From the NCBI GenBank assembly GCA_964247055.1, contig OZ176050.1, positions 12,028,001 to 12,092,000 on the forward strand: a stretch of DNA of 64,000 bases, read 5' to 3'. Under the pieces are notes generated by a model. The model was given only the letters and a program-made list of their open reading frames with translations. It was not told the DNA's origin and searched no databases. Below, one piece after another: positions 1 through 63,910 of the stretch. Each line of letters starts with the position of its first letter. The stretch's first letter is position 1. The position numbers were made by a program, and so were the translations under genes. The stretch comes from Paragordius varius (lineage: Eukaryota; Animalia; Nematomorpha).

Positions 1-3000
1 TTGCTTTGAAATACGACCCTTTGTCCCAAAACATGATATGGTCTGACAATGGCCATCACAATTTGCAGTATAGATCCCTATCCCATTTTATCAAGCATGG
101 TCAACTAGAAAAAGAGTTTGATTCATACGCTGGGAAAAAAATGGTTCATGGCAAAATCTTGCGATACCTCAGTTCACCAAGTTGGTTATTAATTAAATAA
201 TAATTATAGTAAAAATTGAAATTATACAAAAAAAACGTAAAAAAATAAAAACATTTTTTTTCCCTATTTTTAATTTTAACTCACTGTTTTTAACTACAAA
301 GTATAAAATAGAGAGATGGGAATCGGTACACAATTAGTTATATATATTTTACAGTAACTAAATGGTTTACAAGGAAAAATAAGGTTTAAAAATAGTATGA
401 GTGTCTTTTGGAATAAAAAAATTGGTATTTATATTTTTACGTTTTGTCCGTATAATTTCAATTTTTACTCTATAATTTTCTTGGATGATAAGATAAAAAT
501 TTTTAGAAATATAAACCTATTAAATGATTGGCCCTTTTATTTCATTATCTTTTTTTTAGCTTTTCAAAAATTAAAAACGTTGTTATACTGGGAATATATG
601 TTATTTCTGTATTTCAGACGGTTTTACTGATGGTATTGCTATTGAACCTATACGCCGACTATTATACTACACTGACAGCTATGAAAATTACATTGGGGTT
701 TATGATTTAGAAGCTGCATACAATAAACGTCTACTTGAAGGATTAAGTCGCCCAAGAAGCATAACATTAGATAGGATTCATGGGTACTATATTATAAAAT
801 ACAAATAATGATTTGAAAATATATGATGAGTTTTAAAAATCAGAAAAAATTAAGTCCTAAACTTAAATTTTAACAGTATAGTCATTTTTGTTGAACGAAG
901 ATATATTTTGATTGCATAAATCAGCAATTTACAAAATATTTCCGCTATAACCCACATCATATTATTATTCAAAATTTTGAATCAAAATTAAAAGGTTCTT
1001 ATGTTGATGTTCTTTATGTTTATTCACCCTAGATTGATATTTTGGACAGAATGGGGTGACAAAGGAAGAATCGCATCTGCCACAATGGCTGGAACCGATG
1101 TACGAAATTTAGTCTCCAAACCGTCACGTAATCTACAATGGCCCAATGCTATCGTTTGTGATCCTAAAAGTATAGATTTTTATTACATTTTTTCTATAAA
1201 ATAATGGCTTACCTTTTTTATGGAGCGGAAATTTATAAAAAATTTGCATACATTCTTTAAAGTCATTTGATTAGGATCCGTAATATTTGTCTTGTGTGTT
1301 TACAATTTCAATTTTTACTGTAAATGTTAACGTTATCTTATTTGCATATTAAAGGAAAACATGTGTTCTGGATCGATGCTGGTTTGGGAAAACTTTTTCA
1401 AGCCAGTTACTTGGGTCATATTCTGAACGAATATAGTGTTGGAAAACATCCTTTTTCCATGGCTTTCGATTCCACCAATATATATTGGTCAGATTGGGCA
1501 ACTGATACCATTCGATCGTTAGCTATTACCAACCAAACTTCTGTAAATTTAATTTTTTTGTTGATTAAATTATTGGGTACAAAATAAGGCTTACATTATG
1601 ATGTGATGTTTTTTGTTTTCTATCAAATCATTTAAAAATTATTAAATATTTAATATATATTATATAATCATAATTGCCATTACAATTTTTTACCTTTAAA
1701 TGGTTGACATAAATTGTTTCCTTCTAAGCAAAATGAATATTTAGCACTTATATAATTCATGTTGTCACATAATAAAGAGTTATCCCAAAGATATAACGGA
1801 TCCCGTATTTGGACGTATGTTAGGCCTGGACATCTTCGAAAAAGAAAAATGGGACTCGGAATTCGCTCTGATAAAGAATTTGACTGTTTTAGATTCAAAG
1901 GATCAACTTAGTGATGGTTGTTTTACCCATGAAATTAGTTTGGAAAAGGAGATAAAAACTAGCAAGAGTGGAAATTCGCTTAGTTCCCTAGTAGGGGACG
2001 ATGGTAAGAAAAATGACATTCCATTATGGCATTCTAATGGCGGTTGTTCGCAATTTTGCTTTCCCCTCCCTGACAAAAAAAGGGCGTGTGCCTGCAACGA
2101 GGGTGAAACCTTGGGAGAAGATGGTAATTTTTATAAATTAAAAAATTTTAATACGAGGGAATTCAGCTTTGATAAAGCTAACAGAAAAACATATTTTACA
2201 TATGTCAAAGATTATTGAGTAAAAGTTTTAAATAATGTAATTTTAAATGCGGCACAATAGTTAAAACAAAAAGTTTGTATCTTCGGTATTTTTAATTAAT
2301 TTATCTCGTTTATTTTATTAAGGAATCGTAAATGGATTTAAATAAATTTTTTAATAAACATAACAACATGGTACCAATATTTTTGATTTACAATTGTCGA
2401 TTACACTGGACAACAAATTTTTCTACCACTCGAGTTTTTTGCATTTTCTGATAAGTATCAATTTAACAGTATATCTGAAATAAAAATTATAACGCCTTAT
2501 AAGAATTTTGTATAATTTGATTTTTTTTGGATTATGCGCCCTCTTTATCAAAATTTTACTAAAAAATGTTTTCCTTTGAAATACACAAGTAATGCCTATT
2601 TGTAATATATCATTCGAAAGAGTAATAAAAACTCTATAAAATGCATACTAAGTATTACATTGACAGTTAATATTGGACACAAAGATCGACAAACGCGCGA
2701 AGCGAGAGCACTTTTTTTAATTAAAATATTTTCAAAACTAATGGATGAAAATAGCTCAAATTTTGTTTAGATGGTGATGAATGTCCAAAAAAGATAACAT
2801 AAGAAAGTTTTTTTGATTAAAACATTTTTTTATTGCTTTTATGTCACTTAAAACAGCCATTTTTAAGTTTTTTGTTTTTTTGAAAATTACCTTCCCATCA
2901 ATATTAATTTATTTTCTTTACGAGGCTGATAATTTTGAAATTTTAAAGATAAAAACAAAGCTTAAGGTATTTTCGATCTTTTATAGCATGTAATAAATTT

Positions 3001-6000
3001 ACAGTTATAACTATGCATTTTAGTATCCACTAGGTAAAATATTTATGATAATAATAATTTTTATTAAAAAAACCAAAAGCTTTTTCAAACATTTTTTTTA
3101 AATTAAATACTAATATAACCCTAATAATATTAAAATAATTTATATGATTTTCAAATTAGTTTGTCTGAGAAAATTTTTGACTTATTTAAGGATTGAAGAT
3201 TTTGACCATTTTAACCCAAATAACTTTTACATCCGAATGATTTAAATGACTTACTACCATTAAAAGATACAGTTTTTTGCGCTCTTTCGAATGATATAAA
3301 ATACATGGCTTCATATCTATAATTTTCAAAATTTCGAGTTTAATGTTAAATCGGGGCCAAAAATTATCGATAAACTCTGATTTAAAAAAATTCTTGGGTG
3401 TTCGACCAATTTTCTTTTCAGATATACTAATTATGTACTTTAATGAAATAATTAAATTTACAAGAATGGCAGTTACAAAAAGTCAAAATTTGTTGCTAGT
3501 GTTATATTATACATTTTGATATATTAAAAGGCAAAATCCCTTATTTTATATGCTTTTCCTTAGGTCTCACATGCTACATAAACGGTATACCATCCCCACG
3601 AAATAATTTAAGACGAAAAAATTTGTCCCTTTATCTCCGACCTGATTCAAACACAAATGGAGCGACAGATTTTAAGTATCGGACAGATGTCAACGATATT
3701 TTATCGATTGAATGTCCCTTATTGAGTACACCACCTTTTGCTAAGCTTGTGGCATATGATACAAACATTAAAGGGTTTAATCTTCATGATAGAGCCATCG
3801 TAGAACACAAATGTGATGACGGATTCAATCAAACCGGGGGCAATGATAGGCGGGTATGTTCCTTTAACTCAGCTTACACGGGCGTGACTTGGAGTGGTAA
3901 ACCCCTAATATGTTCCCGTAAGTCAATTAATATATCTACAAGCCTTCTAAAAATGTTTCTAATTCAAACATTTTACCGTTATATAACATTTTTTCGTTTT
4001 ATTTATTAGCTATAATCTGTCCGACTTTCTCGATTCCTAATACTGTGGTCAATATATCTTGTTCTGAAATGGGATATGGTAAAGAATGTTCGCTAGATTG
4101 CATAAATGGTACTAAATACATTTCGGGTGACAAGATTCGCACTTGTCAATTGGATGGTCAGTGGTCAGGGTCACTCTTGGTTTGCGAAGGTAAAATTTTA
4201 AATTAATTACTTAAATTCTAAGCATGATATACCATGTAACCTTACATTCACCCTTAATCAATTCAAACTCATTTTTAAACTAAATTCACCCAAAAAATTA
4301 AAAAAATGTGCTTTTAGGCTAATTTAACTCATTTATATATACATATATTATATAGGGATAAAGATTCCATGCAAATTACCTAACTTTAATAATCACAATA
4401 TAATTTCGCAAAATTGTACCTCGAATGGTCTGTTGAATTCAAATAGCGTTTGTCATTTAACTTGTAAGCCTAAAGAAGTCTTTCAAACCTTTCATCGCAT
4501 CAATGGTTCCAACAAAATTGTTTGCAATGCAAATGGTACGCTAAGCGATGATCCACTTTTGTGCACAAGTAATTTTATAACAGTATATCTATAAAAGTAT
4601 GTTCCTAGTTTTCATTAAATAATACTAAGTTGCACTAGTAAAGAGCACACCTTGATTCAACTTTTTTTCTTTCGTTTGAGCCAGGAATGTCCAACACAAA
4701 TGGTTTAGCAGACCGCATTTTTGGATCAAAATATCCGTCGGGCCGCATTCAAAAAATATATGGGCATTGACTAATAATTTATTAGATTTCATACTCTAGA
4801 ATTTAAAACTACTTATTATTTTAACAATTTCTGCTGGTTCAGTGCGGAAATTCGAAAAAATTTATTCATAAAATTTGTTTGTGAAAATTAATTTTACTAA
4901 TTTCGTAAAATTTTTCATTTGAAACTTCTCGCGGGTTGCATATTTATTTGGGTCGCATATTCCCCGCGGGCCGCCCTCACCCCTGATTTAAGCCAACAAA
5001 ACTTCCCTTTACTAAAATTCTATGTAGCAATTTAATTATATATATTAGAATTTTTCTTAACTCATTATAAATATATATTTTATACAAAAAAATATTTATA
5101 ACATTATCAAAAAATATTTATTTCTCTAGGCATACCCCATTGTGAAGATCCCTTAAAATCAGTCTTCGCCCCTCCTATGCGCTATAAAACTGTTGATTGC
5201 AACCCAGAATACCTAAATGGGAGTAACTGTCGTTTAGAGTGCGCTGATGGTTTCAACTATTTAAGCGGAAGTTATGATCATACATGCCACGTTCAAACAG
5301 ATAAAAATAATGTCCTTAAAGGAAAATGGATTGGATCAAAATTATTTTGCACTGGTTTTTATTAATTTAAATTTTTATTATTGATAACACATATCATAAA
5401 AATTATCTTTTAAAAATTAAAATATTTTTCTATGTAGAATGTTCGTCAATGGGCAATGAATTAAAAGAACGAAATTTGAAAGCAATGTGCACTGAAGAGC
5501 TTATTCACCTTAACTCAACAAATTCACAGCCATCTGATCTGAAATCTCAAACAGTATGTGACATTCAATGTCAGAATCCGGAGTACGTCAATGTACTAGC
5601 TTTTAAAGGTGGCGAATTCATTGATAAAAACAATAGGTCAAGTTCTGCTAAAATTGCATGTCAAAAGTTAGTAATTTCTGAAGGAAATACTTCAAAACTA
5701 TCAGTTAATGAATCAAATAACCATAAGATCTCAAACTTTAAAGAGACACAGTTCAATTGGATAAACCTGAATACAAATGCAACCCTTAATACGGAATTCG
5801 ACTACCCCCAGTGTGGAAGTAAAACTTAGCATATAAATAAATTGTCTAGTTATGACTGGTTATGGATGCATTCATGATTATTATAAAAACTTCTAAATAT
5901 ATTTTTAGCTCGTGATTAAATATGTAAAATATTAATATAACAATTAATATACAGTTTTAAAGTTTTATCGAAAATTTTATTAATTGCTATTTTATATTTT

Positions 6001-8755
6001 GACATTTTAACTTAATTTGATCAGATTAAATTATGTTTGTTATTACGATATATATCGATTTGATAATGGCTGATAATAGCCATCTTTGGTGAAATCGCCT
6101 TTAATTTTTTGACCGCTCCTCATCCATCCCTATACAATGTCTATTTTTCAAATAGAATTCATAAATTTTTTGCTGGTTTAGAAATTTTTCAAACACAAAC
6201 ATTTTTGCTTACAATTCCATTCGACACTGAGCCTCGTGATGACAAATTTTTGGGAAACCCCATAAATTGTGGCCTAATTGGAAAATCGTTATACCAATAT
6301 ATCATTGAAAAGCTACCCAATACAATCCCTAAAACAATTACAAACAGACCAATGGAAGTAACTTTTTGCGATGAGCACGAAATGAAGTTTTCATCCGGAA
6401 TACACTGTAAATGGGTAACTAAATTGAATGATACCCAGTGTGTGATTAACAAGAACAATGCGAAAAATCAAAATCATTTAAATGCTGGTCCGCACATATT
6501 GATCATTATTCAAAGGTATGTGTTTTAATTTTCCCAGGAAAGATTAGAAAAAGAAAAATAAATTAAATTATGTATTAATAAAATAGATCAATTTTAAATT
6601 TTATTTTTTCAGAATCTTTTAAATGGATTTAAGGATGATGATAATAATGAACGATTTTAAAAATTAATGTAATGTAATTTAAACGTTAGATCCAAAGATG
6701 ATTCTGATAAATCGCCAGAATCACTAACCATGGATTTGCTAAGGATCTCACCGTGGATTCAGGAAAATAAAATACGAGACAAAGCATTTAATCTAACTCT
6801 GAATGCCAGCCATCTCCATAAGGCAAACTTGGTTAAAGTATGTCCGTTAGGAACAATACCTATTCCTGATTCCAATTGTGGTACTTTTTTTGTTGTTTTG
6901 TTGCAAAATATTTTTAGGGTATTAAATTTGAGAATTATAAATTAAATTTTCACATATATTTTTAAGTCCAATGCCCAAAAGGAACCTTTCACAACGCAAA
7001 ACTTGATAGTTGCGATTTATGTCAAATTGGATATTATCAAGATAATCCTGGCACTGATGCATGCTTCAAATGTCCACCTAAAACATCTACAAAACATATG
7101 GGTTCAACCCAAGTCTTACAATGCTTGAAAGGAACATTCATAGCGAAAAGTATAAAACGATTATTAGTTTTAAAAAATTTTTTATTGTCAATTGTTTTAC
7201 CTTAAATGTTATCGTGATAGAAGGACTCAAATACTCACAAATTGCCTTGTTAATCGCGATAATTCTACTCATTTTAACTATCATGCTGGGAGCTGTTATG
7301 TTCTGTCTCCGCAAGTATGTGCTTATTATTTTTACATTTTTCATAAAAAAATTAAAATTTCTTATTTCGAAAAAGATTTTGAAAAGTTTTTTTCCTATGC
7401 GTATTTAAAACTTTAATACAAGTAAAATTTATATCAAAATATTCAACGATTCACGATTAAAATCAAATTGAATGATTTTATAAAAATATAGGATTAAAAA
7501 CTAGGTTGAAATAAATGCAGTCCTAAAACGGGTTTACATTGATTTGATGGTTATTAACTCTCATTAGTAAGTAATGTTAGACATCGCACTGATAAAATTA
7601 AAATCTAGTTATAAGGCCTCTTTGGTTTCAATAACTGGTTTAATTTGTAAAATGTAAAATATAATGAAAATTTTAGAAAAATATAAGAAATCTAGTATTT
7701 AATTTGTTGGATCAACGAAAATCTTGGTAAATTGTTATTTGGAAGGTGGTGGTACATTGGTTATCCTGGATTCTATGTTTTGCGTATGAGTAAAAAGTTT
7801 GAAATTAGAAACTGCAGAGTTTTTTGTCATAACTGGGGCAGGCAAGTGTTAATGCTTTCATGGGTCCTTAATACAATTTTATCTTACCTTCTATAACTGT
7901 ATATAAATTTGGTCATTTAAAATATAATTTTGACTCATAGCAAATTACTTATGACCTTAGTTTTTCGATGGGAGAATAAATTTAAATATAAAGGGTTTTT
8001 TATATCTAAGAGGCGGTTTAACAGCGGTTGGAAATGGACCTCAAAATTCTCGATTTAGGACGAATATATTTTTTAATGGATTTATACAAAAGCTTTTAAA
8101 AGGAGTGTTATGTATTGATCGCATATTTTATTGGAACTAATTTAAAGTGTCATAACTTAAAATTATTATATATATTCGTAAACATTAATATTGCTTAAAA
8201 TAAAAATCTTGATGTAGCGCGTCAGAATGCCAAATTTTTAAAAGATTTGAATTATCGCTTAGAAAGGTCGAAAAAAATTAACCGTAACGGGGGCGGTTTT
8301 TAAAATTTCAACGAGACAGAATTAGAACTTCGGAGTCAGAAGCAGAATAGTTTTGTCAGAAAAATAGAGCACTGTTTTATGCTCAAAACTCAGTAACAAA
8401 TTATGGTTTCGATGGTTACGGTTTCAAACTTTATTATATTAGGTAAATAAAGTGTTACTAATTTAATGTATTATATGTCTTTTTTATGTAGAATTCCAAA
8501 GTCATATATCAAATCAATTTTTTCCATTAGATAAAATTTGATTTTGATTTAAACAATAACTTCGGCAAATTTCACACCAGATGTAACATTTATATTTGCT
8601 TTAGAAAACCCAGAGTCATTTATCGAATCGCTGAAAAATTCCGTAAAGCCAATATCTATGGGTCATCGAATTCTTCAAACAACAGTAATACTGATACAAG
8701 ACCATATGCAGAAACGAATGAAATGACTCATGTACCATATGGAAACTTTGCATAA
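1..8755 (+). CDS. Mosaic single-pass receptor A (LRP-like YWTD propeller - EGF - about 5 sushi/CCP - SEA-like - GCC2/GCC3 - TM - tail), 5' end outside window
   Basis: 15 phase-consistent GT-AG exons: <1-180, 618-783, 1033-1169, 1355-1542, 1778-2123, 3564-3917, 4010-4189, 4356-4568, 5130-5354, 5438-5818, 6182-6515, 6690-6880, 6967-7149, 7221-7314, 8605-8755. YWTD-type repeats (DGIAIEPIRRLLYYTD, LIFWTEWG, VFWID, IYWSDW); EGF (NGGCSQFCFPLPDKKRACACNEGETLGEDGLTC); CCP modules (YISGDKIRTCQLDGQWSGSLLVC); GCC2/3 (CPKGTFHNAKLDSCDLCQIGYYQDNPGTDACFKCP); TM (IALLIAIILLILTIMLGAVMFCL); tail ends EMTHVPYGNFA-stop. Confidence 0.9.
2400..3420. mobile_element. Probable decayed MITE in an intron of receptor A
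   Basis: Perfect 17-bp inverted pair TATATCATTCGAAAGAG (about 2606) / CTCTTTCGAATGATATA (about 3282) in a 1.4-kb intron. Termini and TSD not resolved. Confidence 0.35.
4682..4985. mobile_element. hAT-type MITE (intronic)
   Basis: Ends CAGGAATG...CACCCCTG; flanks GTTTGAGC / ATTTAAGC (6/8 match, candidate 8-bp TSD); GC-rich subterminal CGGGCCGC motifs in AT-rich intron. Confidence 0.5.
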
Positions 8756-9360: not shown

Positions 9361-11014
9361 ATGAACCCACCGATGAGAAGATTTCAGATTATTTTAAGCG
9401 TTTTGATTTCGTTATGCCTTTTTGTAGCACACAAATGCCAAGAACAAAATCTTGATTCAGAAAACAGTATAATTATAATCAAAATAACGTATTACCTTGA
9501 ATTTTATATTACGAAATTATTCCACCATTTTTCGATTAATATTATTTTATTGGTTTGTAAATCACTAAGTTTTCTTAAACTTTTCGTCAAAGATAAATGT
9601 GAGCCAGTTGTATAATGTTTTGTTTCGCAGGTGTATATATTATTAAACAGATCGAAAATATTTTAAATGACCATATATTATCTCTAAGGTTTATCGTGCT
9701 ATTGTAACCCGTGCAACGACCCTTACAACTCCTGTCAAACCAGTTTAAGCAATGGATCATGCTTTAAAACAACAACACTTTACGGAATATTTTATGGGTA
9801 TATATATAATAATCTAGTTAAAGTATTTTCATTTAGTTTCTGATTTATGGGAACAGTATCCGATTTCATGCATTTTATGAGATTTAGGGTTTCTTTCCCA
9901 AATCTTAATTTAGTAGCAAATCCAAAAAATATTTTAGCATGCCATCATAATTTTAGGTGTCAAGATAATCGATTGTCATGCACCAATAATATGCAAAACA
10001 CAGGCCGTCACAAAACAAGGTCAACCGTTGAAGTCGAGTGCTGTTCTGATCATCATTGGTGTTTCAGCGATTTAACGATATATTCTCCCAATACTCTCGG
10101 TAAAAATAAGAAATCTGTAAAACATTTTTCAACACACAATAAACAATGCCTGGTTATTTAACCAAATAAATTAGTCAACATTGTATAAATATGTGATGTT
10201 GTCTTTTGTCGGATTTAAAAGATGTATTAATCGAATTTATTGTCTCTTTCACTCAATATCTACATAAGTCAGATATCAATAATTTTCATTATTTTTAACG
10301 AAAACTAGGTATCCTCAAATCTATTTCAATTTTGGTTGGGCATCTTGTTAATTTTGGTAATCTAATTTTGCATGTAATTAAAATTTACCCCCCATTTTAT
10401 AGATGATATGTTGCGGCCCACTGTGAAACGATATCATATGCTGAATAATTCTACAATACTTAAGCTGTTTGTGTCGAATCATATAAAAGGTCAATTTGTT
10501 GTAGAGTGGACAGATCCGTCAAATTCTATACTAATCCCTGAAAAAATTATTGTATATAATATTTTTCATTCTAATCCATAACTTTTATACTTTGTCACCA
10601 CAATTTTATATATTATAATAATAGCGAAACGGACAAACAAATATACCAATGAAAAATGTATTATTTAAACTCAAAATCATTCCAATGATCGGTGCTGTTA
10701 GATATCCAAATTTTGCCTATCAAAAACATTATGCATTTCTCACAGGTATAAGATTTACGATTTAAAATAATTGTTGTAACGTTCTCAATCAATAAAAATT
10801 CAACAAGTGTTTTTTAAGATTTTTAGGCTTTTTTTAACAAAAAACATTGGAATAAAAATTCCGTTTAGGGTCTCAGCCACCTTGGTTACCCAAAACTATC
10901 ACAATTAATCCCTCGGCCAACACTTTGATTACGTGTAACGCTTGTCGGGGTGCCCAATCATGTACCATGTGCAACAAATATGAAGGAGTCGAAAGAAACA
11001 ATTTGCCATATTGA
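9361..11014 (+). CDS. Signal peptide + activin/TGF-beta receptor-type Cys-rich ectodomain + FN3-like region; no TM or kinase seen
   Basis: Exons 9361-9466, 9689-9797, 9957-10099, 10403-10551, 10625-10745, 10869-11014 join in phase. Hydrophobic leader MRRFQIILSVLISLCLFVA; 10-Cys domain LSCYCNPCNDPYNSCQTSLSNGSCF...YGCQDNRLSC...VECCSDHHWCFSDL; then FN3-like NSTILKLFV...VVEWTDP. An alternative weak donor after YEG joins 11083-11115 (VEGTTYEILL-stop). Confidence 0.75.
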
Positions 11015-11016
11015 TA

Positions 11017-11019
<3 letters not shown>

Positions 11020-11058
<39 letters not shown>
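11020..11058. repeat. (TA)n microsatellite
   Basis: Direct reading. Other (TA)n tracts near 20961-20985, 42260-42283, 47611-47643, 49079-49112, 57135-57186 and 63038-63071. Confidence 0.95.
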
Positions 11059-11061
<3 letters not shown>

Positions 11062-46939: not shown

Positions 46940-47605
46940 CTAATGTAACCATTTGTGGTCAATAATTATACATATATTGACCAAACAAATTAACAACTGT
47001 AATCTGCATCTCTCCTCTATATGTATAACAAAATTTATGAATGGAAAATTATTTTATATATTTAACACACAAAATTGTAAATATCATTGTTTTTTTATTT
47101 TTGTTCAAAACCGGCAAACTTTTCACATTCAATAGCAAATTTAGACTTTTTTTGGTTAACCGAATAAACATTTTAGCAAATTGTGTATGTTAGTATGTAC
47201 CCTTGTCATCTCATAAGCAATCAAGAATGGTTGAAAAACATAGATTCTTTACATGAATATGATTTTGTCTGCCTTAAAATGTATTATTTATCATTTTTAT
47301 TTCCCTATGATATGATAACCATATATTGCCTTCAAATAAATATTAAAATATTTATGTATAGATGTATTAAAATTAATTAAACTTTGACCCAGAAAAATTT
47401 TAGCCTAACATATCAATGACACTTTAAATCATTTCTGAAGAGCTAAAATTTATTATTGAAATATCAAATGAATATATAAACCCTTTAAGTTTAATCACTT
47501 AAACATTTCATATTTATGTCAATAAAAAAGTATATATTTTTGGATAATATAATTTTTTATTTACTATTTTTTGCCTCAAGTTTGCAATAAAAATGTTGTT
47601 TTCTA

Positions 47606-49071: not shown

Positions 49072-49113
<42 letters not shown>

Positions 49114-53988: not shown

Positions 53989-56900
53989 TTAAAAGGTTTC
54001 ATAAGGGACATTTGTCATTTCCTGTGTGTCAGCTTTTCCACGTCCTGAAAGTGTCGGTGGCAGAGGTATTTTTGCAATAGCGGGTAATTTCATTCTAAAT
54101 TAATGTATTAAAAAATATGATAATTAAAGGGCATCAAATAATACACTAGAAAAAGAGTTTATTTTTTAATAAAATAGTACGTTTACCCTCTTCGATGATA
54201 TAAGGTAAAAGCACCAATGAGAATGGCTATTAGGAGGAATAGCACCAAAGCCACAACCAAAGCTGCTCCACTCGTCATATTTGAGCCTGTAAAAAAATGT
54301 TAAAACAAAATTTGTCAATTGAAATAACTTATAAGATTAACAATGCTAATTTTATATAAATATTACCCGATAGTTTATAAAATAAAGCGCATTTTATTAT
54401 AGTAGAGAAAGCTAATAAAATAAACTTAAACCATTAATATTATATCCATTGAAAAGCTAGCAATGCATAATTTATTAACACTGTATATTAGACGATAAAA
54501 AAATTTGTCACTCTTTTAAAAGAAATGAGGTTACTTGTTTTGAGTGAAGAAGCATTGATAGATATAGAGCTTTGGCATTGTGAAGAGCCTGGATAAAGTG
54601 TTGTGTAAGAATCAAGACATTTTTCACATTTGGTTTGACCTGCAAGTGCTTGATAAGTTCCAACCGGACAAACTGTACACTTTTGTGAAAGTTTGTCGTA
54701 AAAAGTACCGACAGGGCACGCAGCTAATATATATATATTACAAAATAGGTTTTTGTAAAACTCCTTGACTTATAAATTTTTAAGCGTAGACTTTATATAC
54801 CATTTACAATTCAAATTCACCCTAAAAATAAATTATATGTTTTAACTAATAATATATTCATTATTTATATGAAATATATCTTCATGGCTTTTATTATTTT
54901 TTCAGTAATATTATAACTCAAATTTTTTTAAAAAAATTAATAAATATAGGTGATTTTTAATCTTAAAAAACATAAAATTTTATTTGATGGTTATTTTGAA
55001 TTATAAGGGTGAATTCATTTTTAAGGATATTTAAAATACAATAGAAAAAAAGTTACTGGACCTACAAAATATTAAGTTTGTGGGTATTTAAAATCATCAT
55101 ACTAAACCAAAATTCTTCAGCCTTTTTTTGTATGTGAACCGTAGTTGAATAAATAAATTTCCATTAAAATAATAAGTTTTTCGTTTACAATAAATTATTG
55201 AGTTATTATTATATATCTTTAATTAAAAGTTTAAAATACGTACCGCAATCATTTGTGTTTGCTATTAATACGTGCCCTTTGGCACAAGTGATATCATCTA
55301 TGGAACCTTCTGAGCGGCGATATCGAATGTTGGAGAGTGCTGGATCAATATTGAATTTAGGTGCGACACTGACTAAACGTACTGATGAAAATATGCCACT
55401 TTTAACGGATTTGTCAAAATTTCGGGCTAAATTTGTCATATTTATGGCAAAATCTGACGTTTTTTGAACGCCCTCTTGAGCCGGGAAGAATTGACCATTC
55501 AACGAACTGCATAATTAATGACAAAAAAAATATTATATTCATAACACCTTTTCAGACGGTAAATAATGATAAAATATAGTCTGAATAAATTGGAATAAAA
55601 AGTTAAGAGAACTAATAATGAAAATGAAATAGTGTAAGAAAAGTATGTTATTAAATATACTTTTGTGTTCCAAAACTGTATGTGTAGTTGAACCAATTTG
55701 AGTTTTTACTTTCCATGCATTGTACCTAATACAAATAAATCTAAGTTAGTTTGGCAAAGGTAAACGGTGTTCATTAAAATTAAAGATCATAATAAAGAAA
55801 ATGGCCTAAATTTCTATAAGTTAGGGTTGAGTTTAACTGGTTAGGAATGCAAAAATGCCCCTTACTAAAACCGTTTACAAAATAACCCTCAGGAAATATA
55901 AAACAATGGTATCAAATGTTTAAATTTTTTTCGATTCTAATTCATGGTTAAAAACATTGCCAGAATCAAATTTAATTGGTTAATTTTCTTTTTTGTTACA
56001 ATATAAATCTAATTTTAACAATTTAAAACCCCAATCAAAATGAAATCAAATTTTTTATATACATCAAGGGAAGTTATGGTACATAAATCACTATCCATGC
56101 ATGGCATAATTAGGGGTGAATTCCTTAACCATTTTTTGATTGCTCCAAGGAGTATTGTATCATCACATTCTTGATTCCTGTCATATTTATCTTTGGGATC
56201 AGTGAAGTATAACACTATGTTACCGGATATTTTTTGCGACTCCGGTAATACCAAATCTATTGTACATAAATATTTTAGTAAAATTAATATTGTATAGGGA
56301 CGCTTCTTTTAATACCATTTGCAATTCAAATTCACACTTGAATAATTACAATTCACCCTAAAAATAAATTATGTGTTTTCGTGATAATATAATACATCAT
56401 TAATATGAAATATATTTTTACTACATAGTTTATTATATTAATTTTAACAGAATTTCATATTTTCAAAAATATTATAAAATAAAGGTAATTTTTAATCTTA
56501 AAAAACACATAATATATTTTAGTAATTTAAATGTTCAAGGGTGAATTTGAATTGTTCGGGATGAATTTAAATTATTCGAAGGTGAATTTAAACTGTAAAT
56601 GGTATATTATACCATAATGAACATTATAAGATAAAACAAAATAAAAGACTAATATTTTTTATAGGAAAACCATTTTTCTCGATCCTTAATAAGTGTACCT
56701 ATATGATTATAATTGTAAAATAATTTGCATATAAAAACAATTTACATCTTTATTTATTTCTCGGACTAATATAAGAAGATACTTTAGTAAACAAGGATAA
56801 ATTGAATTCTATAAATTTTGGTTTTTAATTTTTTATTTTCGTCCTTATATAATTTCATTACAAAAATTTTAGGAAACCCACACCTAGCTTTATTTCAAAA

Positions 56901-57132
56901 AATTCTTGATCACCCTAAAATAAATTATGTTTTTTTAAGATTAAAAATTACCTATTATTTCCTATATTGTTTAAAAATAAAATTTAGTTTAAAACTAAAA
57001 TAATAGAGAAAAAAAATAAACTAAGACATAAAGATATATTTCATATTAATAATGAGTTATTCAGGTTCAAAAACACATAATTTATTTTTATTGTGAATTT
57101 GATTTGTTCAAGGGTGAATTTGAATTGTAAAT

Positions 57133-57191
<59 letters not shown>

Positions 57192-60100
57192 GAGAAAAAT
57201 ACCACTACATCCAGGTACAGTATTCAACGTTGGATTCCACATCAAATCGGCGTTCAAAAGGTTATCGAACCCATCGGAAGGACATATAAATGAATTGGTA
57301 TAAATGTTATTAATGGTAGAGGGAGAAGAAACTTTATTTTTTCCATTGTACACAATGTTATTACGGTTAGTTCGTGTCAAATCAATATCGGCAAAATTTA
57401 TAGCAAGTCCAGTTCCTGGATCACAAACGATTGAACAAGCGGTTTGGGGACCGTTTTGTTTAAAATTCATTCTTTATACATTCATATATATATATATATA
57501 TATTTGGAAATGAAAATGCGTAAAATTATGAGGCTAATTTTTAAATAAACCCCTTAAGAGAACAGAACAGTTGGAAACTGTGATAAAATATTGACACTTT
57601 ATTTCAATTATTATCACAAAATCTTTCTTGTAAATATTGTAAAAAATATAGTAGCACATAATATAGTAATCCCATTTTAACATGAGAATACAATATTTTT
57701 TTTAAAATTAATATTACACAATAAACCAAAAATTATACGAATATTGATGGGGAGAAAGTACATAAACCAACTAAAATCTTTTTTATTACCTGTCACAAAC
57801 AGACAACATTTTATCATAAAACATTAACACTATTTGCAATATTCAAACCCCATCTTTTAACAACATTATTACATTAGAAACAACATTCTTCATTCAATAC
57901 AATTAAATACTTAAAAAAATGTTGTTTTAAATTACTGAATCAACATTTTGCTACCAAGATAAACTAAAATGATACACACTTTCCAGGAGATCCAAAATTT
58001 AAAAAAATTTCAAGCATAAAATCTTTACCGGTCCGAGAGTGTGGGCGTCAAAGTATGACATTCCAACCGTCCGCGATCCGGTTTAGGAAGTTGAGAACAT
58101 GCCGAACATATGAGCGGTTCCCCGGACCAAACGCCGTTTTCAAGGCATTCCCTAGCCCTGGCCCCTGAAATGTAATTATAATTGGGGGCGCATTTATGTA
58201 CACATTGAGAACCTATAGAGAACCGTGATGTACCAACTTTATTGTTGCTATTATCGATATTATTCATTATGGGTGAAGGAGACGATGAGACATTTGTTAT
58301 GGTGGAGCCATCTTCATAACATGAAATTTCTATGGCATTTGCTGGGTTTGGTTTAGTATCACAGTATAAAGCTGTTTGTGATACATAAGAAAGAGTATTA
58401 TAGTAAGATTAATAAATGTCCGGAAAAAACTTGGGATATCAATAAATATTTAAAAATAGTTTTCTTCTATATAGTCCAAAACAGCGTTTTATTCCATTTT
58501 CACTGATAAAAAATGCCGTGTCTTAACACAGAATTTACAAAAAAAACATTTTATTAATAGAACATCATATTTATATTATGATATATTTTATACCATGGCA
58601 TGAAAGTAAGGGTTGAGACCACGTGCCATCATCCTGACAAACAGCTGTTTCGGAACCAACTTTGGGAACATATCCAGGCTTACAGCGTAAATGACAAACT
58701 TGACCGGGTTTGGGATCTAATGGACATTCTTTAACAATTACATTTTCCTCATCCAAATATGGGTATCGGCATGAAGTTTCTACAAAATATATGTATCATT
58801 AAATATCACATATTTCATTTATTTATATACTCATTAATTGGAAAATTGAATGACAGTTTGAGTTTAAGATTTTGTGAATAAAAAACATATCTTTTTAAAA
58901 GCGCATACGACCGTTATGAATGCATTTATGGTTGTGATAAACGTGTTCAAATATCATCAGTCAAAATATTTTTATACTATACTTGCACGTAATATAAAAT
59001 AAATGTGAAGGTGAACGAACGCATAAAAATACAATTATTTTTGGGAAGATCAGTATCAATTACGGTAAAATGTACAATGGAAACATGAGTGAAAAAAATA
59101 AAACAATTCAAAAGAATAGGGATAACATTTTCCTGGTACAGGTTTTTTTCTAATTAAGTTTACACATCATAAATGCATATATTCACTGTATCCGATATCA
59201 TTATAATGTGAATATATGGAAGAAAAATAAAAAATTTAATGAATTTTAACAATTTTACACTACCAATATTAGTATATAATAAACATGTGTCAAAATATTT
59301 GACTGGTTATTTTTAAAGCGATGACAATCACTCTGATAAATGCATTCGAAATCGGTCAAATTTAACCTCACATATAATTTAATAAATACCTGAAACAATT
59401 ACTATACTTTAAGCAAAAAAGACACCTTACCTAGTTCAGTTATATTTTTTGTTTGTCAAATAAAATAAAAAAAATTCTCTGCTAATTTTTTAAAAATTAA
59501 TATAAATACAAAACGTAAAAGGTATAAACCTATTTTTTAGGAAAAATCATGATTTTAACGTCAAAATTTTGAGTTGCAGAATTAAGAATGGAGATGTAAA
59601 TTGGTAACAGAGTTTAAATATTTTAATATTGTAATCATATGTGATATGTGTAAAAAATATCAAGGATAAAAAAGATATGACTATCTTTATGAAATCAATA
59701 ATAATAATAATAATCTTTTATTTTACACATTGTAATTTGTTTTTTACAATTATAAATTTTATGACATATTACTTTGACAAACTAGCGGTGAGCCGGTCCA
59801 AGATCCATCCGCATTGCACGTTCTTTCCCGATCACCACTAATGTATAAACTGCCAGGGGCGCATTGAAATACACATTTAGTTTCGAAACTGCCTGGACAC
59901 GAAACGAGGATTGTGTTGGGCGGACTAGCAAATGATGAACATGAACGTCCTAAAAAATTGTAATAAGAAAACCTTTTGTAATTATATATAAATTATATTA
60001 ATATGCTCTATGTAAATTTATTTTAAAAAAAGAAAAGAATAAGGTAAATACATCTAATATTAGGCACACATACATATTCTTCTTTAACTACTTGATATTT

Positions 60101-63035
60101 GAACAAAATTTGACAAAGGAACTTTTGAGCCCGCTAGTAAATTTTATCATATCTTATTCTTTGCAAAAATAATTTTTAAACCCTTTGCAATTTATTTATT
60201 ATGCTAAAATTTGGTTCCCTTTGATAAATTATTACACACCAATTGTAAAATTTATTCTTTATAATAAATATTAATAATTCGTGTAAATTGTAATATGGTT
60301 TGTGCTAGTTGTGTTTCCCAAAGGTGACATTTATTTTTGGGGAGAAAAATCACATACATATCCTCTCCAAAATGCATGTAAATTTATTTTATTCATCCCA
60401 TTATTTGTCGTTATACACTAGTTTGACGCGTTTATAAAAATTGTGATTAAAAAAGGTAGGACACAATTTTAAAAAACCACAAAAAAATATTATTTTAAAT
60501 TATGTGGTCAAAAATATAAGTTAACCTTTGCATGTAAGCGGTTTCCCAGACCAAAAACCATTGGATTGACATGTCCTTACTTCATCCCCATGGTCTTTAA
60601 CAAAACCTGGGCGACACTTGAACGTACAATTTGAACCAAGTCGGCCCATTTGTTTACAGCCTTTACTGTCATTTTCGCCATCGCCAATCTGGACTCCTGG
60701 AAATCTAAGAGCCGTGGAAGTCACATTTTCTGGACAAATGAGAGATGCTCGACAAGTCAAACCATCCGGCAACAACGGATTTTGCTGTAATATCACGCAC
60801 GCATAAAAAGGTGGAATTCAAATGATCGGAATAAAATGGTTAGAGTTATTGGTTAACTTTTAAAACATAAACAGGTAAAACTTTTTTCCACCCAAAACAA
60901 AAGATAAGAGGGTAAAAATGAAAAAAAACAATTATTGTGCAAAAAAATACTAATTTTTGGTAAGAGAATGTATGTATTTTCAGAAGCTCTTTTCAACTGT
61001 GTCAATTTTGTCAGGAGAATTTAAAAATAGCGCAAAAAAAATTACAAAAAAAGAAAAAATGATAGTTAAAAACGTTCGCACATAACAAGGTTTGACTGTA
61101 TAAAGTAAATATTATTTTTAAATTGTTTAAATAGAATTACCTCGATAGGTTCATCACTGGTATTAAAGGCAAAACGAATCAAAGGACTACGATTCTGTCC
61201 ACCATACAAAAAGCGTCGCGGCAAAATAGTACCTAATTAATACAAAGCAATATATTATATTTAGAATTAATATACATCGTATTATATACAAATTGTCAAC
61301 CATTTACACTGGGTGATAAACATAATTAATACCTTTAATCATAAATTACTATCAATATTTCTTTTAAGTAATAATTAATCTTTTTTATATATTAAACAAC
61401 ACTTTTCCAAATACCCAATTTTTGATTAAAAATAATTATGACCCAAATAAGTTTAGTTTTTAGTGCCAAATATAGTTCTTCTAGATATACATGTTGTTTA
61501 TACGAAAAAAATGTAATCTAATGACGCTTTATACATATAAAACGTATAAAAAAGTTACATTTTGATATATAATCGTTTTTGACGAAAAAAATGAAAATAC
61601 TGTTTTTATGTACCTCCAAGATTTATTGTGGCCGCAGAAGAATTACTGCTTTCCGAAGCGCTTAGGCCTTCATCGCCTTTGGCCATTGCATCGCTTGCCA
61701 TAATCGTAATTTTTAGGGCTTTGGTTCGACTTAACGGTCCTCCGCTATAACGGGACCTATCGTTTGGATAATGAAGGTCAGCGCATAAACAAACCTTTCG
61801 ACGGGCATCTGGAACCGGGACACAAATATCACTGCAACCGCCTTTATCGGGTTGAGCGCATGGATGATTACGAAACTATATATATGTTTTGCACATACAG
61901 AGTAAAGATTAAAAGTAAATATTATTGCAAAAAAAGCATAAGAATAAATTATCATTATGAAGGTCTCTTAACGTTTAGATCTAAAAATGAAGAATTTTTT
62001 CGAAAACATTAGTATATAAGGTTAAACCTTTTCCGGGGTGTATGACGATTTTACGTAAGCATGTATATCAAGGAGTCGACTAAAAGTTGGATTTGTTATA
62101 TCTGAAACCTTATCTGCCATAGAAAGAGCTGTATTTCCAAACGGTCGAACACCTATACCGACTCCCGACGTTCCAGGAGCTCCATCATCAGAATTTATAC
62201 CAGAACGTGAATCTACAAAGTGAAAAATAAAATTATAAAATATATTAAAGCCTGGCTTGTTTTAACTTTAATTACGCTTATAATAATGATAAGTGAAAAA
62301 TATATAAATTGAGTTAGATACCAATTTACATATTAATTATTTTGCTACTCAAAACGATGCGTTCCATTTAAAAAATTGAGGTTTAAAAAGTATGGTTGCC
62401 TTTTCAAAAAAAGGGTTTAAGCTTTTGTCCTTATATTTTAGTATTTAATGTAGAAAAAATGTTTTCAACTATTCAAGTTTCCTATAAAAAGTTTAAGACC
62501 AAAAAAATGTTAATCATTGTACATCATATGTAAAAGTTGATTATTATATTTTTGGAAAATCATCCAGAAATGAATGATGAATCAATCATTCGTTATTATC
62601 TTATAATAATCTAAAATGGAATGAATAAGGACTTGGTTTTTCGGGTGTACTGCTGAAAAGACCACTTTGTAAAGTTGTTGATTGTGTTGAATCAGTCTCA
62701 GAAACGGGAGCTGATGTTAACGATGATATCGCAACTTGTTTGGGCAATTTTTGTTGGATCGTGGGAGATTGTGTGGACAAAAGTTGTCGTTTAAGTTTTG
62801 GCTAAAGGGATATATATATGTATATATATATAAAATTTATATGAAAGTCCAGCAATTAAAACAAAGGAGACACCAGTATAATGAATGACCTTTGAATAAT
62901 TCTTACCATGGCTTAATGACAAAGTTTACACCTAGTGTAGGGTATAACAGATAATAAATGAATTAACCGTTAATATGGACGCTTTAAATATAACAGGTAA
63001 ATATTTTAACATTATCAGTGTGAAATTGTCGATTA

Positions 63036-63074
<39 letters not shown>

Positions 63075-63910
63075 CTAAAATTTAAAGTTTTTATCAAATT
63101 GTTTGTTAGATATTTTATTTAAAAGACTATAAAAGCCAATTTGATAATACGTTTGTTTTATTAACAATATACATTTATTGCGACAATAATTAACTGAGTA
63201 TGGCAATAAATAAACTATCAAACCGTATAGTTAACCAAAAACCTAAAACCATCTAACATTATTGACAAATGAATGAAAATTTTCCTTACTGAGAGAGGAG
63301 CTATTGATTGTGTTGGGCTATTTAAAAACGCGGCTATAGATTCGTTTGACATTAAATCGATTCTGGGTAAACGTCTTATGGTAGATGTTATCCAATCCGT
63401 CCAGAAAAAGTATTGAGGTGTCAGCGTTAAAGCAAATGGATGTTTCCTTACCATAGATACATGCGTTTGAATATTTTTCCCATCTAAGTTACATGAAGCT
63501 AAAATGTCACGTTTTGCATCAACCCAAAAAAGCCGTTTATCTATATCATTATACAACATAATAAATTAAGCTCTATTTTATAATATCGGTAAGTTTTGTG
63601 AAATATATATGGAATCATTTCGTAAAAATATTAATTATGTTTTTTATAAAAAAAAGAAGAAAAACTATTAAAGATCATTTCGATATAATGTTTTTTGAAC
63701 TAAAAAGAGATTTATAAATATAAGTTATTGCTAAAGATAGAGCAACTTATAATTATAATTGAAATTTTTCAAATTTGCTAACTTTGTTTATCCAAAGATA
63801 ACCCATTAGGCCAAACTATATCATCTTCAATGAGCGTTTTTCGGTTAGTCCCATCCATGTAAGCCTTTTCAATTTTGGCATGAACACCCCAATCAGTCCA
63901 ATACATATAT
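53989..63910 (-). CDS. Mosaic single-pass receptor B, paralog of receptor A; 5' end outside window
   Basis: 17 phase-consistent exons: 63910-63783, 63540-63290, 62801-62633, 62212-62028, 61875-61614, 61232-61141, 60784-60526, 59949-59773, 58779-58594, 58371-58029, 57471-57203, 56256-56063, 55725-55661, 55506-55244, 54723-54535, 54286-54187, 54094-53989. [24 protein letters not shown]; [18 protein letters not shown]; CCPs; [34 protein letters not shown]; [25 protein letters not shown]; tail [10 protein letters not shown]-stop. Confidence 0.92.
54798..55030. mobile_element. TA-target MITE family copy (left TIR intact)
   Basis: TA|TACCATTTACAATTCAAATTCACCCTAAAAATAAATTAT at 54798; decayed GGGTGAATTC near 55008. 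Confidence 0.65.
56313..56604. mobile_element. TA-target (Tc1/mariner-type) MITE, about 290 bp
   Basis: TIRs TACCATTTGCAATTCAAATTCAC / GTGAATTTAAACTGTAAATGGTA, with internal ATTCACCC/GGGTGAAT subrepeats. Confidence 0.75.
56870..57136. mobile_element. TA-target MITE family copy (right TIR intact, running into (TA)n)
   Basis: GGGTGAATTTGAATTGTAAATGGTA|TATATA at 57112-57136; CACCCTAAAATAAATTATG near 56911. Confidence 0.68.

What the first reader, a model, noticed from the sequence alone, without database searches (positions are those of the whole stretch)
1..63910. Convergent paralog pair of an uncharacterised YWTD-EGF-sushi-SEA-GCC2/3 receptor family
Seen: receptors A (+, ends 8755) and B (-, ends 53989) face each other 45 kb apart with the same module order. 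Module-level similarity is clear (YISGDKIRTCQLDGQWSGSLLVC vs [23 protein letters not shown]; VCHLTCKP vs VCHLRCKP; EDGLTC vs PDGLTC), and intron phases match in the propeller exons. Known: YWTD-EGF is the pH-sensitive release module of the LDLR/LRP family; CCP plus GCC2/3 repeats are typical of SVEP1/SCUBE/Uninflatable-type proteins. I know no characterised receptor joining these in this order with a TM. Inference: an endocytic or ligand-sorting receptor family with diverged ligand specificity. Similar uncharacterised models may already exist in invertebrate annotations.
Basis: partly seen in the sequence, partly recalled or inferred. Interest (0 to 1): 0.8.

Follow-up and report, generated by a model that had tools for sequence, protein, structure and literature searches.

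The report
Three-gene mosaic propeller-sushi receptor family
Two facing genes in this window, and a third 260 kb away, encode single-pass membrane proteins with LRP-type beta-propellers on a sushi-domain stalk; the combination is real and apparently undescribed, but its function and transcripts are untested.

Summary
Gene A (+, stop at 8753-8755) and gene B (-, stop at 53989-53991) are convergent multi-exon animal genes, 45 kb apart, with the same module order. That order is YWTD propeller(s) plus EGF, five CCP/sushi modules, an unassigned spacer, one GCC2/GCC3 (Ephrin_rec_like) unit, a transmembrane helix and a short tail ending in a shared Y-x-x-F motif.

Both genes start outside the window. 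B has three propellers. A has one clear propeller and one degenerate one. A third paralog, C, lies 260 kb downstream, a locus this scan had already noted.

The "SEA" module is not supported. It has no Pfam match, the paralogs cannot be aligned there, the folds are low-confidence, and the public protein search found no relatives.

The propellers are LRP4/5/6-class and more likely bind ligand themselves. Endocytosis through the terminal Y-x-x-F is plausible but inferred.

Variants in a diverged haplotype are mostly synonymous (13 of 19), so gene A is under purifying selection.

No RNA data were available, and I could not run a domain-architecture search. I found no characterised protein with this architecture. 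I rate it a new variant of known kinds, of moderate interest.

The parts
1..180 (+). Gene A: end of the first exon of its clear YWTD propeller. The exon starts about 140 bases before the window. Earlier A exons lie 3-5 kb upstream, in L007.
   Evidence: 41.5% identity over 53 aa to the first exon of B's propeller 3. Phase-1 donor at 99 or 180.
618..783 (+). Gene A: YWTD propeller exon.
   Evidence: 31-37% identity to the matching exon of all three B propellers, E about 4e-9. Junctions are phase 1 in and phase 2 out.
1033..1169 (+). Gene A: YWTD propeller exon carrying the F-W-T-E-W blade motif.
   Evidence: Pfam Ldl_recept_b 4.4e-9. 45.8% identity to B propeller 2. Also found in the whole-genome PF00058 scan.
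1355..1576 (+). Gene A: last propeller exon. The donor is at 1517 or 1576.
   Evidence: Pfam Ldl_recept_b 6.9e-5. 35-38% identity to B. 2 of 3 listed variants are synonymous.
1992..2123 (+). Gene A: EGF module after the propeller, cysteines 2-5 (the acceptor, 1939 or 1992, is uncertain).
   Evidence: Pfam FXa_inhibition 6.9e-8 and EGF_LRP2 8.9e-7. A phase-1 donor at 2123 joins 3564.
3564..3917 (+). Gene A: exon carrying the sixth EGF cysteine (L-T-C), a linker and CCP/sushi 1.
   Evidence: Pfam Sushi 6.3e-4. The junction 2123->3564 has the best splice score and completes the EGF. There is no in-frame ATG upstream in the open frame.
4010..4189 (+). Gene A: CCP/sushi 2, with six cysteines.
   Evidence: Pfam Sushi 3.8e-6. 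39.7% identity to B sushi 2, E 7.6e-17. Reciprocal positional best hit in B and C.
4356..4568 (+). Gene A: CCP/sushi 3, divergent and lacking the conserved Trp.
   Evidence: Six-cysteine spacing. Best match is B sushi 3, 33% over 75 aa, E 2e-9. No Pfam Sushi hit.
5130..5354 (+). Gene A: CCP/sushi 4.
   Evidence: Pfam Sushi 0.011 and F54D1_6_C 0.0022, both below cut-off. Six-cysteine spacing. Phase-1 junctions.
5438..5818 (+). Gene A: module 5, a degenerate six-cysteine CCP-like module with long inserts.
   Evidence: Cysteine spacing as in C module 5. No Pfam hit. Phase-1 junctions. 2 of 3 listed variants are synonymous.
6182..6880 (+). Two exons, 6182-6515 and 6690-6880, ending in a C-x2-G-x9-C half-unit.
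   Evidence: No Pfam hit. Only a self-hit in the own genome. AlphaFold pLDDT 54. Structural search gave noise. A diverged haplotype differs by 1.9% in the first exon against 8-10% in flanking pieces that are mostly intron.
6967..7149 (+). Gene A: GCC2/GCC3 (Ephrin_rec_like) unit.
   Evidence: Pfam PF07699 7.5e-13. 38% identity to B. A phase-1 intron right after the preceding Cys codon occurs at the same place in A, B and C.
7221..7318 (+). Gene A: transmembrane exon. A hydrophobic stretch of about 23 residues is followed by R-K-Y.
   Evidence: Translation. Junctions.
8531..8755 (+). Gene A: last exon (acceptor uncertain, 8531-8649), cytoplasmic tail with the terminal E-M-T-x-V-P-Y-x-x-F motif, and stop.
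   Evidence: 59% identity over 17 aa to the B tail. Translation and stop.
53989..54094 (-). Gene B: last exon. Tail with an A-K-I-P-L-P motif (shared with C), the terminal V-P-Y-x-x-F motif, and stop.
54187..54286 (-). Gene B: transmembrane exon.
   Evidence: Hydrophobic stretch followed by H-R-R. Junctions 54535->54286 and 54187->54094.
54535..54723 (-). Gene B: GCC2/GCC3 (Ephrin_rec_like) unit.
   Evidence: Pfam PF07699 1.3e-10. 46.7% identity to C.
55244..56256 (-). Gene B: spacer of unknown fold. Two exons, about 56256-56092 and 55474-55244.
   Evidence: No Pfam hit. Not alignable to A or C except for the terminal C-x2-G-H...C piece. Junctions.
57203..57471 (-). Gene B: module 5, CCP-like. 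Its first two cysteines lie at the end of the previous exon.
58029..58371 (-). Gene B: CCP/sushi 4 plus the start of module 5. The acceptor is uncertain (58311-58371).
   Evidence: Pfam Sushi 4.3e-8. Junction options.
58594..58779 (-). Gene B: CCP/sushi 3.
   Evidence: Pfam Sushi 2.3e-9. 46.8% identity to C sushi 3, E 9e-17. Phase-1 introns on both sides.
59773..59949 (-). Gene B: CCP/sushi 2.
   Evidence: Pfam Sushi 4.1e-5. The best non-self hits in the own genome are A (53.8 bits) and C (46.3 bits).
60526..60784 (-). Gene B: exon with the P-D-G-L-T-C end of the EGF and CCP/sushi 1.
   Evidence: Pfam Sushi 4.6e-8. The motif is shared with C, 70.6% over 17 aa. There is no in-frame ATG in the open frame before it.
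61795..61875 (-). Gene B: EGF after propeller 3. The 3' border is uncertain.
   Evidence: Pfam EGF_LRP2 5.2e-5. The only frame-consistent GT-AG pair (61795->60784, phase 0) drops a C-x-C pair that the open frame carries.
63290..63910 (-). Gene B: the last two exons of propeller 3 (63910-63783 and 63540-about 63290). Propellers 1, 2 and the start of 3 lie beyond the window end, in L006.
   Evidence: Pfam Ldl_recept_b 5.9e-5 and 54.7 bits in the genome scan. Junctions. L006 exons.

Best explanation
A, B and a third gene C, 260 kb downstream on the same contig, form an old three-member family of type I single-pass membrane proteins. They were assembled from shuffled extracellular modules.

From the N-terminus each has:
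- two or three YWTD six-bladed propellers, each followed by an EGF module, of the LRP4/5/6 class and without any LDL-A repeat;
- five CCP (sushi) modules, mostly the six-cysteine variant;
- a fast-evolving spacer of about 180-260 residues of unknown fold;
- one GCC2/GCC3 unit;
- a transmembrane helix;
- a short tail with a Y-x-x-F near its end.

Shown: the modules, their order, the paralogy, the absence of LDL-A repeats, and purifying selection on gene A.

Inferred:
- The propellers are the ligand-binding heads, as in LRP4, LRP5/6 and nidogen. They are not an acid-release device for LDL-A repeats.
- The CCP/GCC stalk holds the propellers away from the membrane.
- The terminal Y-x-x-F acts as a tyrosine-based sorting signal, so that the receptor and its bound ligand are internalised.
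- The unalignable spacers and the different propeller numbers suggest that the three members have diverged in what they bind.
For: Modules and order:
- Pfam hits.
- Colinear A-B matches and B-C matches.
- Own-genome searches show that A, B and C are each other's best sushi matches.

One gene, not two:
- In A the sixth EGF cysteine lies in the sushi-1 exon, across a phase-1 intron (2123->3564, best splice score).
- B and C carry the same D-G-L-T-C motif next to sushi 1.
- There is no in-frame ATG in the open frames that start the sushi-1 exons of A and B.
- The same head-to-tail order occurs three times.

Other support:
- Module borders are phase-1 introns, including one right after the same Cys codon before GCC2/3 in all three genes.
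- 13 of 30 CCP best hits are positional, against 6 expected by chance. Modules 2 and 3 account for 9 of them.
- There is no PF00057 match in A, B or C, while 42 matches occur elsewhere in the genome.
- B propeller exons match LRP4 and LRP6 best in the PDB. Single-propeller chains score 104-106 bits, against 72 for nidogen and 47 for LDLR.
- All three have a transmembrane stretch and a tail with Y-x-x-F.
- Of 19 variants listed inside predicted A exons, 13 are synonymous, against 21-27% expected (P 1e-5 to 2e-4).
Against: - There is no transcript evidence. All runs that hold the locus are DNA.
- Gene models are hand-built from open frames, GT-AG pairs and paralog alignment. Several junctions are ambiguous, notably B's EGF3->sushi 1, the tail acceptor of A and the start codons.
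- A's first propeller is not recognised by Pfam.
- Function rests only on analogy. The tail has no NPxY or PPPSP motif, and a Y-x-x-F at a C-terminus can arise without being a sorting signal.
- No orthologs from other species were found, so conservation beyond this genome is unknown.
Confidence: 0.55

Rival explanations
1. They are signalling co-receptors of the LRP4/5/6 type, binding Wnt-, Dkk- or agrin-like ligands on the propellers. They work by recruiting partners at the surface, not by carrying cargo into the cell.
For: The propeller exons are closest to LRP4 and LRP6 among solved structures. The genes have tandem propeller-EGF units and a single TM, like LRP5/6.
Against: The genome keeps a canonical LRP5/6-like gene, with several propellers followed by LDL-A, on contig 4. 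The tails are short and have no PPPSP-type motifs. At exon level, A, B and C propellers are no closer to that gene than to the LDLR-like or nidogen-like genes.
Confidence: 0.2
2. They are adhesion or matrix-anchoring proteins. A nidogen-like propeller would bind laminin-type partners, on a selectin-like CCP stalk, without a cargo or signalling role.
For: CCP stalk plus short tail is the selectin/Furrowed layout (own knowledge). YWTD propellers without LDL-A repeats also occur in nidogen. The spacer evolves fast, as stalk or mucin-like regions do.
Against: The propellers score lower against nidogen than against LRP4/6. The conserved tail motif argues for an intracellular partner.
Confidence: 0.15
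3. The architecture is an annotation artefact. Each locus holds two adjacent genes, a secreted propeller-EGF protein and a sushi-GCC-TM protein, and the pair was duplicated together.
For: There is no RNA evidence for the joining intron. In A that intron is long (1.4 kb) and holds a high-copy repeat. B's EGF3->sushi 1 junction is awkward.
Against: In A the EGF is only completed by the L-T-C at the start of the sushi-1 exon, and the frames join in phase 1. The same D-G-L-T-C motif sits beside sushi 1 in B and C. No ATG or signal peptide is available in the sushi-1 open frames of A and B. The same order occurs in three old paralogs.
Confidence: 0.07
4. One or more copies, A above all, are decaying pseudogenes.
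For: A's upstream propeller is not recognised by Pfam. A's sushi 3 lacks the conserved Trp and gets no Pfam hit, and module 5 has long inserts.
Against: All predicted exons are open. Cysteine spacings are kept. Variants in A are mostly synonymous, 13 of 19.
Confidence: 0.05

Closest known systems
LRP5/6 (Arrow) and LRP4
   Same: Type I membrane proteins whose ectodomain starts with tandem YWTD propeller-EGF units. B's propeller exons match LRP4 and LRP6 best among solved structures.
   Different: There are two or three propellers, not four. There are no LDL-A repeats. Five CCPs, an unknown spacer and one GCC2/3 unit sit in their place. The tail has no PPPSP or NPxY motifs. A separate LRP5/6-like gene exists in the same genome.
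SVEP1 (Polydom) and Drosophila Uninflatable
   Same: They combine CCP modules with GCC2/GCC3 (Ephrin_rec_like) units.
   Different: To my knowledge those proteins have no YWTD propellers, carry GCC2/3 units in threes, and have many EGF and other modules. Two such large genes (C-type-lectin-like, LDL-A, CCP, three GCC2/3, many EGF) exist elsewhere in this genome and are distinct from A, B and C.
LA-less YWTD proteins: pro-EGF, Cueball, nidogen
   Same: They have YWTD propeller plus EGF without LDL-A repeats. Pro-EGF and Cueball are also single-pass membrane proteins (own knowledge).
   Different: None has a CCP array or a GCC2/3 unit. Nidogen scores lower than LRP4/6 against B's propeller exon.
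Selectins and Drosophila Furrowed
   Same: They have a stalk of six-cysteine CCPs, a single TM and a short tail with tyrosine-based motifs. The resemblance in cysteine pattern is from memory, not tested.
   Different: The head is a C-type lectin plus EGF, not propellers. There is no GCC2/3 unit.

Membership tests
LDL receptor family (core members) | LDL-A (complement-type) ligand-binding repeats | tested here: not met
   The PF00057 six-frame scan of the whole genome gave 42 matches, none inside the A, B or C loci.
LDL receptor family (core members) | YWTD propeller flanked by EGF modules | tested here: met
   PF00058, PF14670 and PF24468 hits in A and B. PDB matches to LRP4, LRP6 and LDLR.
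LDL receptor family (core members) | Single transmembrane segment and NPxY motif in the tail | tested here: not met
   The TM is present, but the tails of A, B and C as translated hold no NPxY. They end in V-P-Y-x-x-F (A, B) or N-Y-x-x-F (C).
LRP5/6 (Arrow) | Four propeller-EGF units followed by three LDL-A repeats | tested here: not met
   B and C have three units, and A has one clear unit plus one degenerate. There is no LDL-A.
LRP5/6 (Arrow) | Repeated PPP(S/T)P motifs in the cytoplasmic tail | tested here: not met
   None is seen in the translated tail exons. B has a single P-P-T-L-S.
SEA-domain proteins | SEA domain (PF01390) next to the membrane | tested here: inconclusive
   No Pfam hit at E<=1 for the spacer exons of A, B or C. 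The PDB sequence search was empty. AlphaFold gave pLDDT 54 and 37. The best structural Z was 5.3, and a TMPRSS6 match (residues 84-155) reached only Z 3.6, within noise.
SVEP1 / Uninflatable type | CCP arrays together with GCC2/GCC3 units | tested here: met
   PF00084 and PF07699 in the same genes.
SVEP1 / Uninflatable type | The further modules of those proteins (vWA, HYR, pentraxin for SVEP1; C-type lectin, many EGF, laminin G for Uninflatable) | tested here: not met
   No such Pfam hits in any exon scanned. The genome's own Uninflatable-like loci are elsewhere.
CCP/sushi module | Four conserved cysteines and a Trp, Pfam PF00084 | tested here: met
   Four modules in B and two in A are above or near the cut-off. 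Most carry six cysteines with spacing about 13-15, 7-11, 3, 14, 12.

The most novel reading that the evidence does not exclude
The family is a lineage-specific invention, possibly of horsehair worms or their near kin. LRP4/5/6-class propellers, freed from LDL-A repeats, were mounted on a CCP/GCC stalk with a new tail. They now serve as surface receptors for a new ligand class, for instance uptake or sensing of host-derived molecules in a parasite that has few other YWTD receptors. The family makes up three of the six YWTD loci found in this genome.
Probability: 0.2. Interest if true: 0.55.

Novelty: new variant of a known kind. Interest (0 to 1): 0.3.

Why it matters
If real and expressed, this is a clean natural example of LRP-type propellers working without LDL-A repeats on a different stalk. 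That bears on what the propeller does by itself: bind ligand, or release it.

The family is also half of this small genome's YWTD-receptor repertoire. It may therefore matter for the biology of the animal, which earlier scan notes call a parasitic horsehair worm.

All the parts are common modules, and module shuffling in invertebrate surface proteins is frequent. Without function or orthologs the finding is therefore of moderate interest.

Tried and rejected
1. RNA support. The run search returned only DNA holders. Laying four runs on 1300-7299 gave contigs that cover introns and exons alike, so there were no splice joints.
2. Orthologs.
   - An HMMER search of 1.84 billion representatives with C's single-exon spacer gave 0 hits, not even a self-hit, so this genome's proteins are not in that library.
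   - A word search with B's sushi-2 exon found no candidates.
   - The Atlas search with B's EGF/sushi-1 exon found only generic sushi clusters.
   - I did not search repeat-domain exons in the big library. Multi-propeller or multi-sushi giants would fill the list, as the PDB test showed (LRP4 at 326 bits from six stretches).
4. The F54D1_6_C hit (E 0.0022) suggested C. elegans F54D1.6 as a relative. The literature calls that a nidogen-domain protein family (PMC4587998), so I dropped the lead.
5. SEA. Pfam, a PDB sequence search, two AlphaFold jobs and a structural search gave nothing usable. The alignment of the spacers (A1) was meaningless.
6. Source of the stalk. The other GCC2/3 loci in the genome are large Uninflatable/SVEP1-like genes, not relatives of this stalk.
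7. Origin of the propellers. Exon-level BLAST does not place A, B and C nearer to the LRP5/6-like gene than to the LDLR-like or nidogen-like genes.
8. Literature. Three full-text searches on the domain combination and on F54D1.6 found no description of this architecture.
Full report
**Where the window lies.** The window is G000 contig 1, bases 12,028,001-12,092,000, in a 110.6 Mb assembly of 44 contigs. G+C is 24-34%. Its open frames are short and separated by AT-rich stretches, as in an intron-rich animal genome. Earlier notes of this scan call the animal a horsehair worm, on mitochondrial evidence. I did not check that.

**The observation.**
- Translating all stop-free frames shows two sets of exons. 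One is on the + strand from the window start to about 8755. The other is on the - strand from about 53989 to the window end.
- Pfam recognises the same families in the same order in both sets.
  - Ldl_recept_b: A 4.4e-9 and 6.9e-5; B 5.9e-5, and 54.7 bits in the genome scan.
  - FXa_inhibition/EGF_LRP2: A 6.9e-8; B 5.2e-5.
  - Sushi: A 3.8e-6, 6.3e-4 and 0.011; B 4.6e-8, 4.1e-5, 2.3e-9 and 4.3e-8.
  - Ephrin_rec_like, the GCC2/GCC3 unit: A 7.5e-13; B 1.3e-10.
  - Sushi 2 is 39.7% identical over 73 aa (E 7.6e-17).
  - Sushi 3 is 33% over 75 aa.
  - GCC2/3 is 38% over 47 aa (E 1.7e-9).
  - Propeller exons are 33-46% identical.
  - The last 17 residues are 59% identical.
- The stops are at 8753-8755 and 53989-53991. 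The genes are therefore convergent and 45.2 kb apart.

**Extent of the genes.** Both start outside the window.
- Beyond the window end, B has twelve more exons that make propellers 1 and 2, their EGF modules and the start of propeller 3 (L006). B thus has three propeller-EGF units, each propeller built from four exons.
- Upstream, A has a first exon with a signal-peptide-like stretch and an EGF-like piece. It then has a region with one exon weakly like B's propeller 1 (29% identity, E 2e-6) that Pfam does not recognise.
- A's clear propeller straddles the window start.

**A third paralog.**
- Own-genome searches with B's sushi-2 and GCC2/3 exons found A, and a third locus at contig 1, 12.35-12.38 Mb. 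An earlier first-stage note had flagged that stretch.
- I fetched the locus.
- It shows three propellers (some with inserts), the D-G-L-T-C end of an EGF, four CCPs plus a CCP-like fifth, a 301-codon spacer exon, one GCC2/3 unit, a TM and a tail.
- B and C are 46.8% identical in sushi 3 (E 9e-17) and 46.7% in GCC2/3.

**Are propeller and stalk one gene?** No RNA could be brought to bear.
- The run search listed only DNA holders. The four runs laid on 1300-7299 cover introns and exons alike.
- Indirect evidence favours one gene.
  - In A the EGF after the propeller has five cysteines in exon 1992-2123. Its sixth (L-T-C) opens the exon that carries sushi 1. The two join by the best-scoring GT-AG pair, in phase 1 (2123->3564).
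  - B and C have the same D-G-L-T-C motif beside sushi 1.
  - The open frames that begin the sushi-1 exons of A and B have no ATG before that motif.
  - The same order is kept in three paralogs so old that their spacers no longer align.
- One weak point remains. In B the only frame-consistent junction from EGF 3 to sushi 1 (61795->60784, phase 0) removes a C-x-C pair that the open frame continues into. That junction needs cDNA.

**Exon-intron pattern.**
- Propeller introns lie at homologous positions with phases 1, 2, 1 in A and in all three B propellers.
- The exon ends of this genome's LRP5/6-like and LDLR-like genes look the same where I read them. I did not compute their junctions. If shared, the pattern is ancestral and says little about A-B kinship.
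- CCP modules are bounded by phase-1 introns, the classic mark of shuffled modules.
- A phase-1 intron sits right after the same Cys codon before the GCC2/3 exon in A, B and C.

**The CCP array.**
- Most modules have six cysteines, with spacing near 13-15, 7-11, 3, 14, 12. From memory this is the selectin-type variant.
- Module 5 keeps a similar spacing but gets no Pfam hit.
- 13 of 30 between-gene best hits are positional, against 6 expected by chance. Modules 2 and 3 account for 9 of them. At least part of the array predates the duplications.

**The "SEA" module.**
- Between module 5 and GCC2/3 lie about 176 residues in A and about 260 in C, and two exons of about 130 residues in B.
- There is no Pfam hit at E<=1.
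- The three are not alignable, except for a terminal C-x2-G...C half-unit.
- Each matches only itself in its own genome.
- C's spacer has no hit among 1.84 billion representative proteins.
- A's first spacer exon has no PDB relative.
- AlphaFold without an alignment gave pLDDT 54 (pTM 0.50) for A's exon, with a beta-alpha-beta-beta-beta...beta order, and 37 for C's spacer.
- The structural search gave a best Z of 5.3, and a TMPRSS6 match (residues 84-155) reached only Z 3.6, which is noise by the tool's own guide.
- SEA is therefore neither shown nor excluded.

**Is gene A alive?**
- Runs X4 and X5 hold a diverged haplotype or strain.
- Its contigs differ by 1.9% across the first spacer exon. 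They differ by 8-10% across flanking pieces that are mostly intron (table 8).
- Of the 19 listed variants that fall in my predicted A exons (propeller, EGF, sushi 1, 2, 4 and module 5), 13 are synonymous. The expected share is 21-27%, so P is 1e-5 to 2e-4.
- The frames are real and under purifying selection in both the head and the stalk.

**Place among YWTD genes.**
- The genome-wide PF00058 scan finds only six loci.
  - A, B and C.
  - A nidogen-like gene.
  - An LDLR-like gene with LDL-A repeats.
  - A multi-propeller gene followed by LDL-A, i.e. LRP5/6-like.
- PF00057 has 42 matches in the genome and none in A, B or C.
- In the PDB, B's propeller exons match LRP4 and LRP6 best. Single-propeller chains score 104-106 bits, against 72 for nidogen and 47 for LDLR.
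- Exon-level BLAST inside the genome does not single out a donor gene.

**Mechanism.**
- There are no LDL-A repeats. The propeller therefore cannot do its known LDL-receptor job of displacing ligand from those repeats at low pH (established knowledge).
- The nearer analogies are LRP4, LRP5/6 and nidogen, where the propeller faces bind ligand.
- All three tails are short, and each has Y-x-x-F near its very end: V-P-Y-x-x-F in A and B, N-Y-x-x-F in C. This fits the Y-x-x-hydrophobic sorting signal read by clathrin adaptors (established knowledge).
- B and C also share A-K-I-P-L-P just inside the membrane.
- I therefore favour a ligand-binding, internalising receptor, at moderate confidence.
- The rivals are an LRP4/6-like co-receptor role and an adhesion role.

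**Comparison with the known.**
- I know no characterised protein that joins YWTD propellers to a CCP/GCC2/3 stalk with a TM.
- Three literature searches found none.
- The weak F54D1_6_C hit led to a nidogen-domain family, which is unrelated.
- The GCC2/3-bearing genes elsewhere in this genome are large Uninflatable/SVEP1-like proteins.
- I could not query a domain-architecture database. Unnamed models of the same kind in other invertebrates are therefore not excluded.

**Verdict.** This is a real three-gene family with an unusual but modular architecture. It is a new variant of known kinds, of moderate interest. The SEA label and the pH-release reasoning should be dropped. The single-transcript model and any function await cDNA and experiments.

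Noticed in passing
window 2300-3500: The intron between A's EGF exon and sushi-1 exon holds a very high-copy repeat. Summed contig depth there is about 1000 times that of the flanks in all four runs, with many internal joints.
   Followed up: no
window 187-480: A roughly 290-base element in A's propeller intron has well over 100 copies across the genome at 67-90% identity. Many match on both strands at the same place, which suggests a foldback or MITE-like repeat.
   Followed up: no
window 13648-15303: Open frames of a hAT-type transposase remnant. The hAT dimerisation domain scores just below the Pfam cut-off, E 0.0012.
   Followed up: partly
window 32998-35640 and 45066-46940: Ordinary genes lie between A and B. 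One is a sulfotransferase (PF00685, 7.7e-12). The other is a SAR1/Arf-family GTPase (PF00025, 5.2e-22).
   Followed up: partly
window 9688-10158 and 17996-19230: Two cysteine-rich exon pairs look like TGF-beta/activin-receptor-type ectodomains, apparently a tandem duplicate. Pfam found nothing for the second exon of the first pair.
   Followed up: no
many introns, e.g. L007:4813-4870, L006 around 4100-4180, L005:5947-6108: A widespread short tandem repeat reads as N-C-S-R-V-N-L units when translated. It creates false protein matches between unrelated loci.
   Followed up: no
window 1300-7299 (run X3): A run filed under a different organism label (organism B) holds this same DNA at low depth (about 4), partly with zero differences. 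A host, a contaminated sample or a mislabelled sample are possible.
   Followed up: no
G000:C2:4257000-4290000 (L019-L022) and G000:C1:9557000-9575000 (L023-L024): Two large Uninflatable/SVEP1-like genes. By eye their frames hold a C-type-lectin-like start, LDL-A, CCPs, three GCC2/3 units, many EGF repeats and, in the first, a possible HYR-like part.
   Followed up: partly
whole genome G000: The YWTD repertoire looks small: six loci in the PF00058 scan, with no LRP1- or LRP2-sized gene among them. The scan gives a lower bound.
   Followed up: partly
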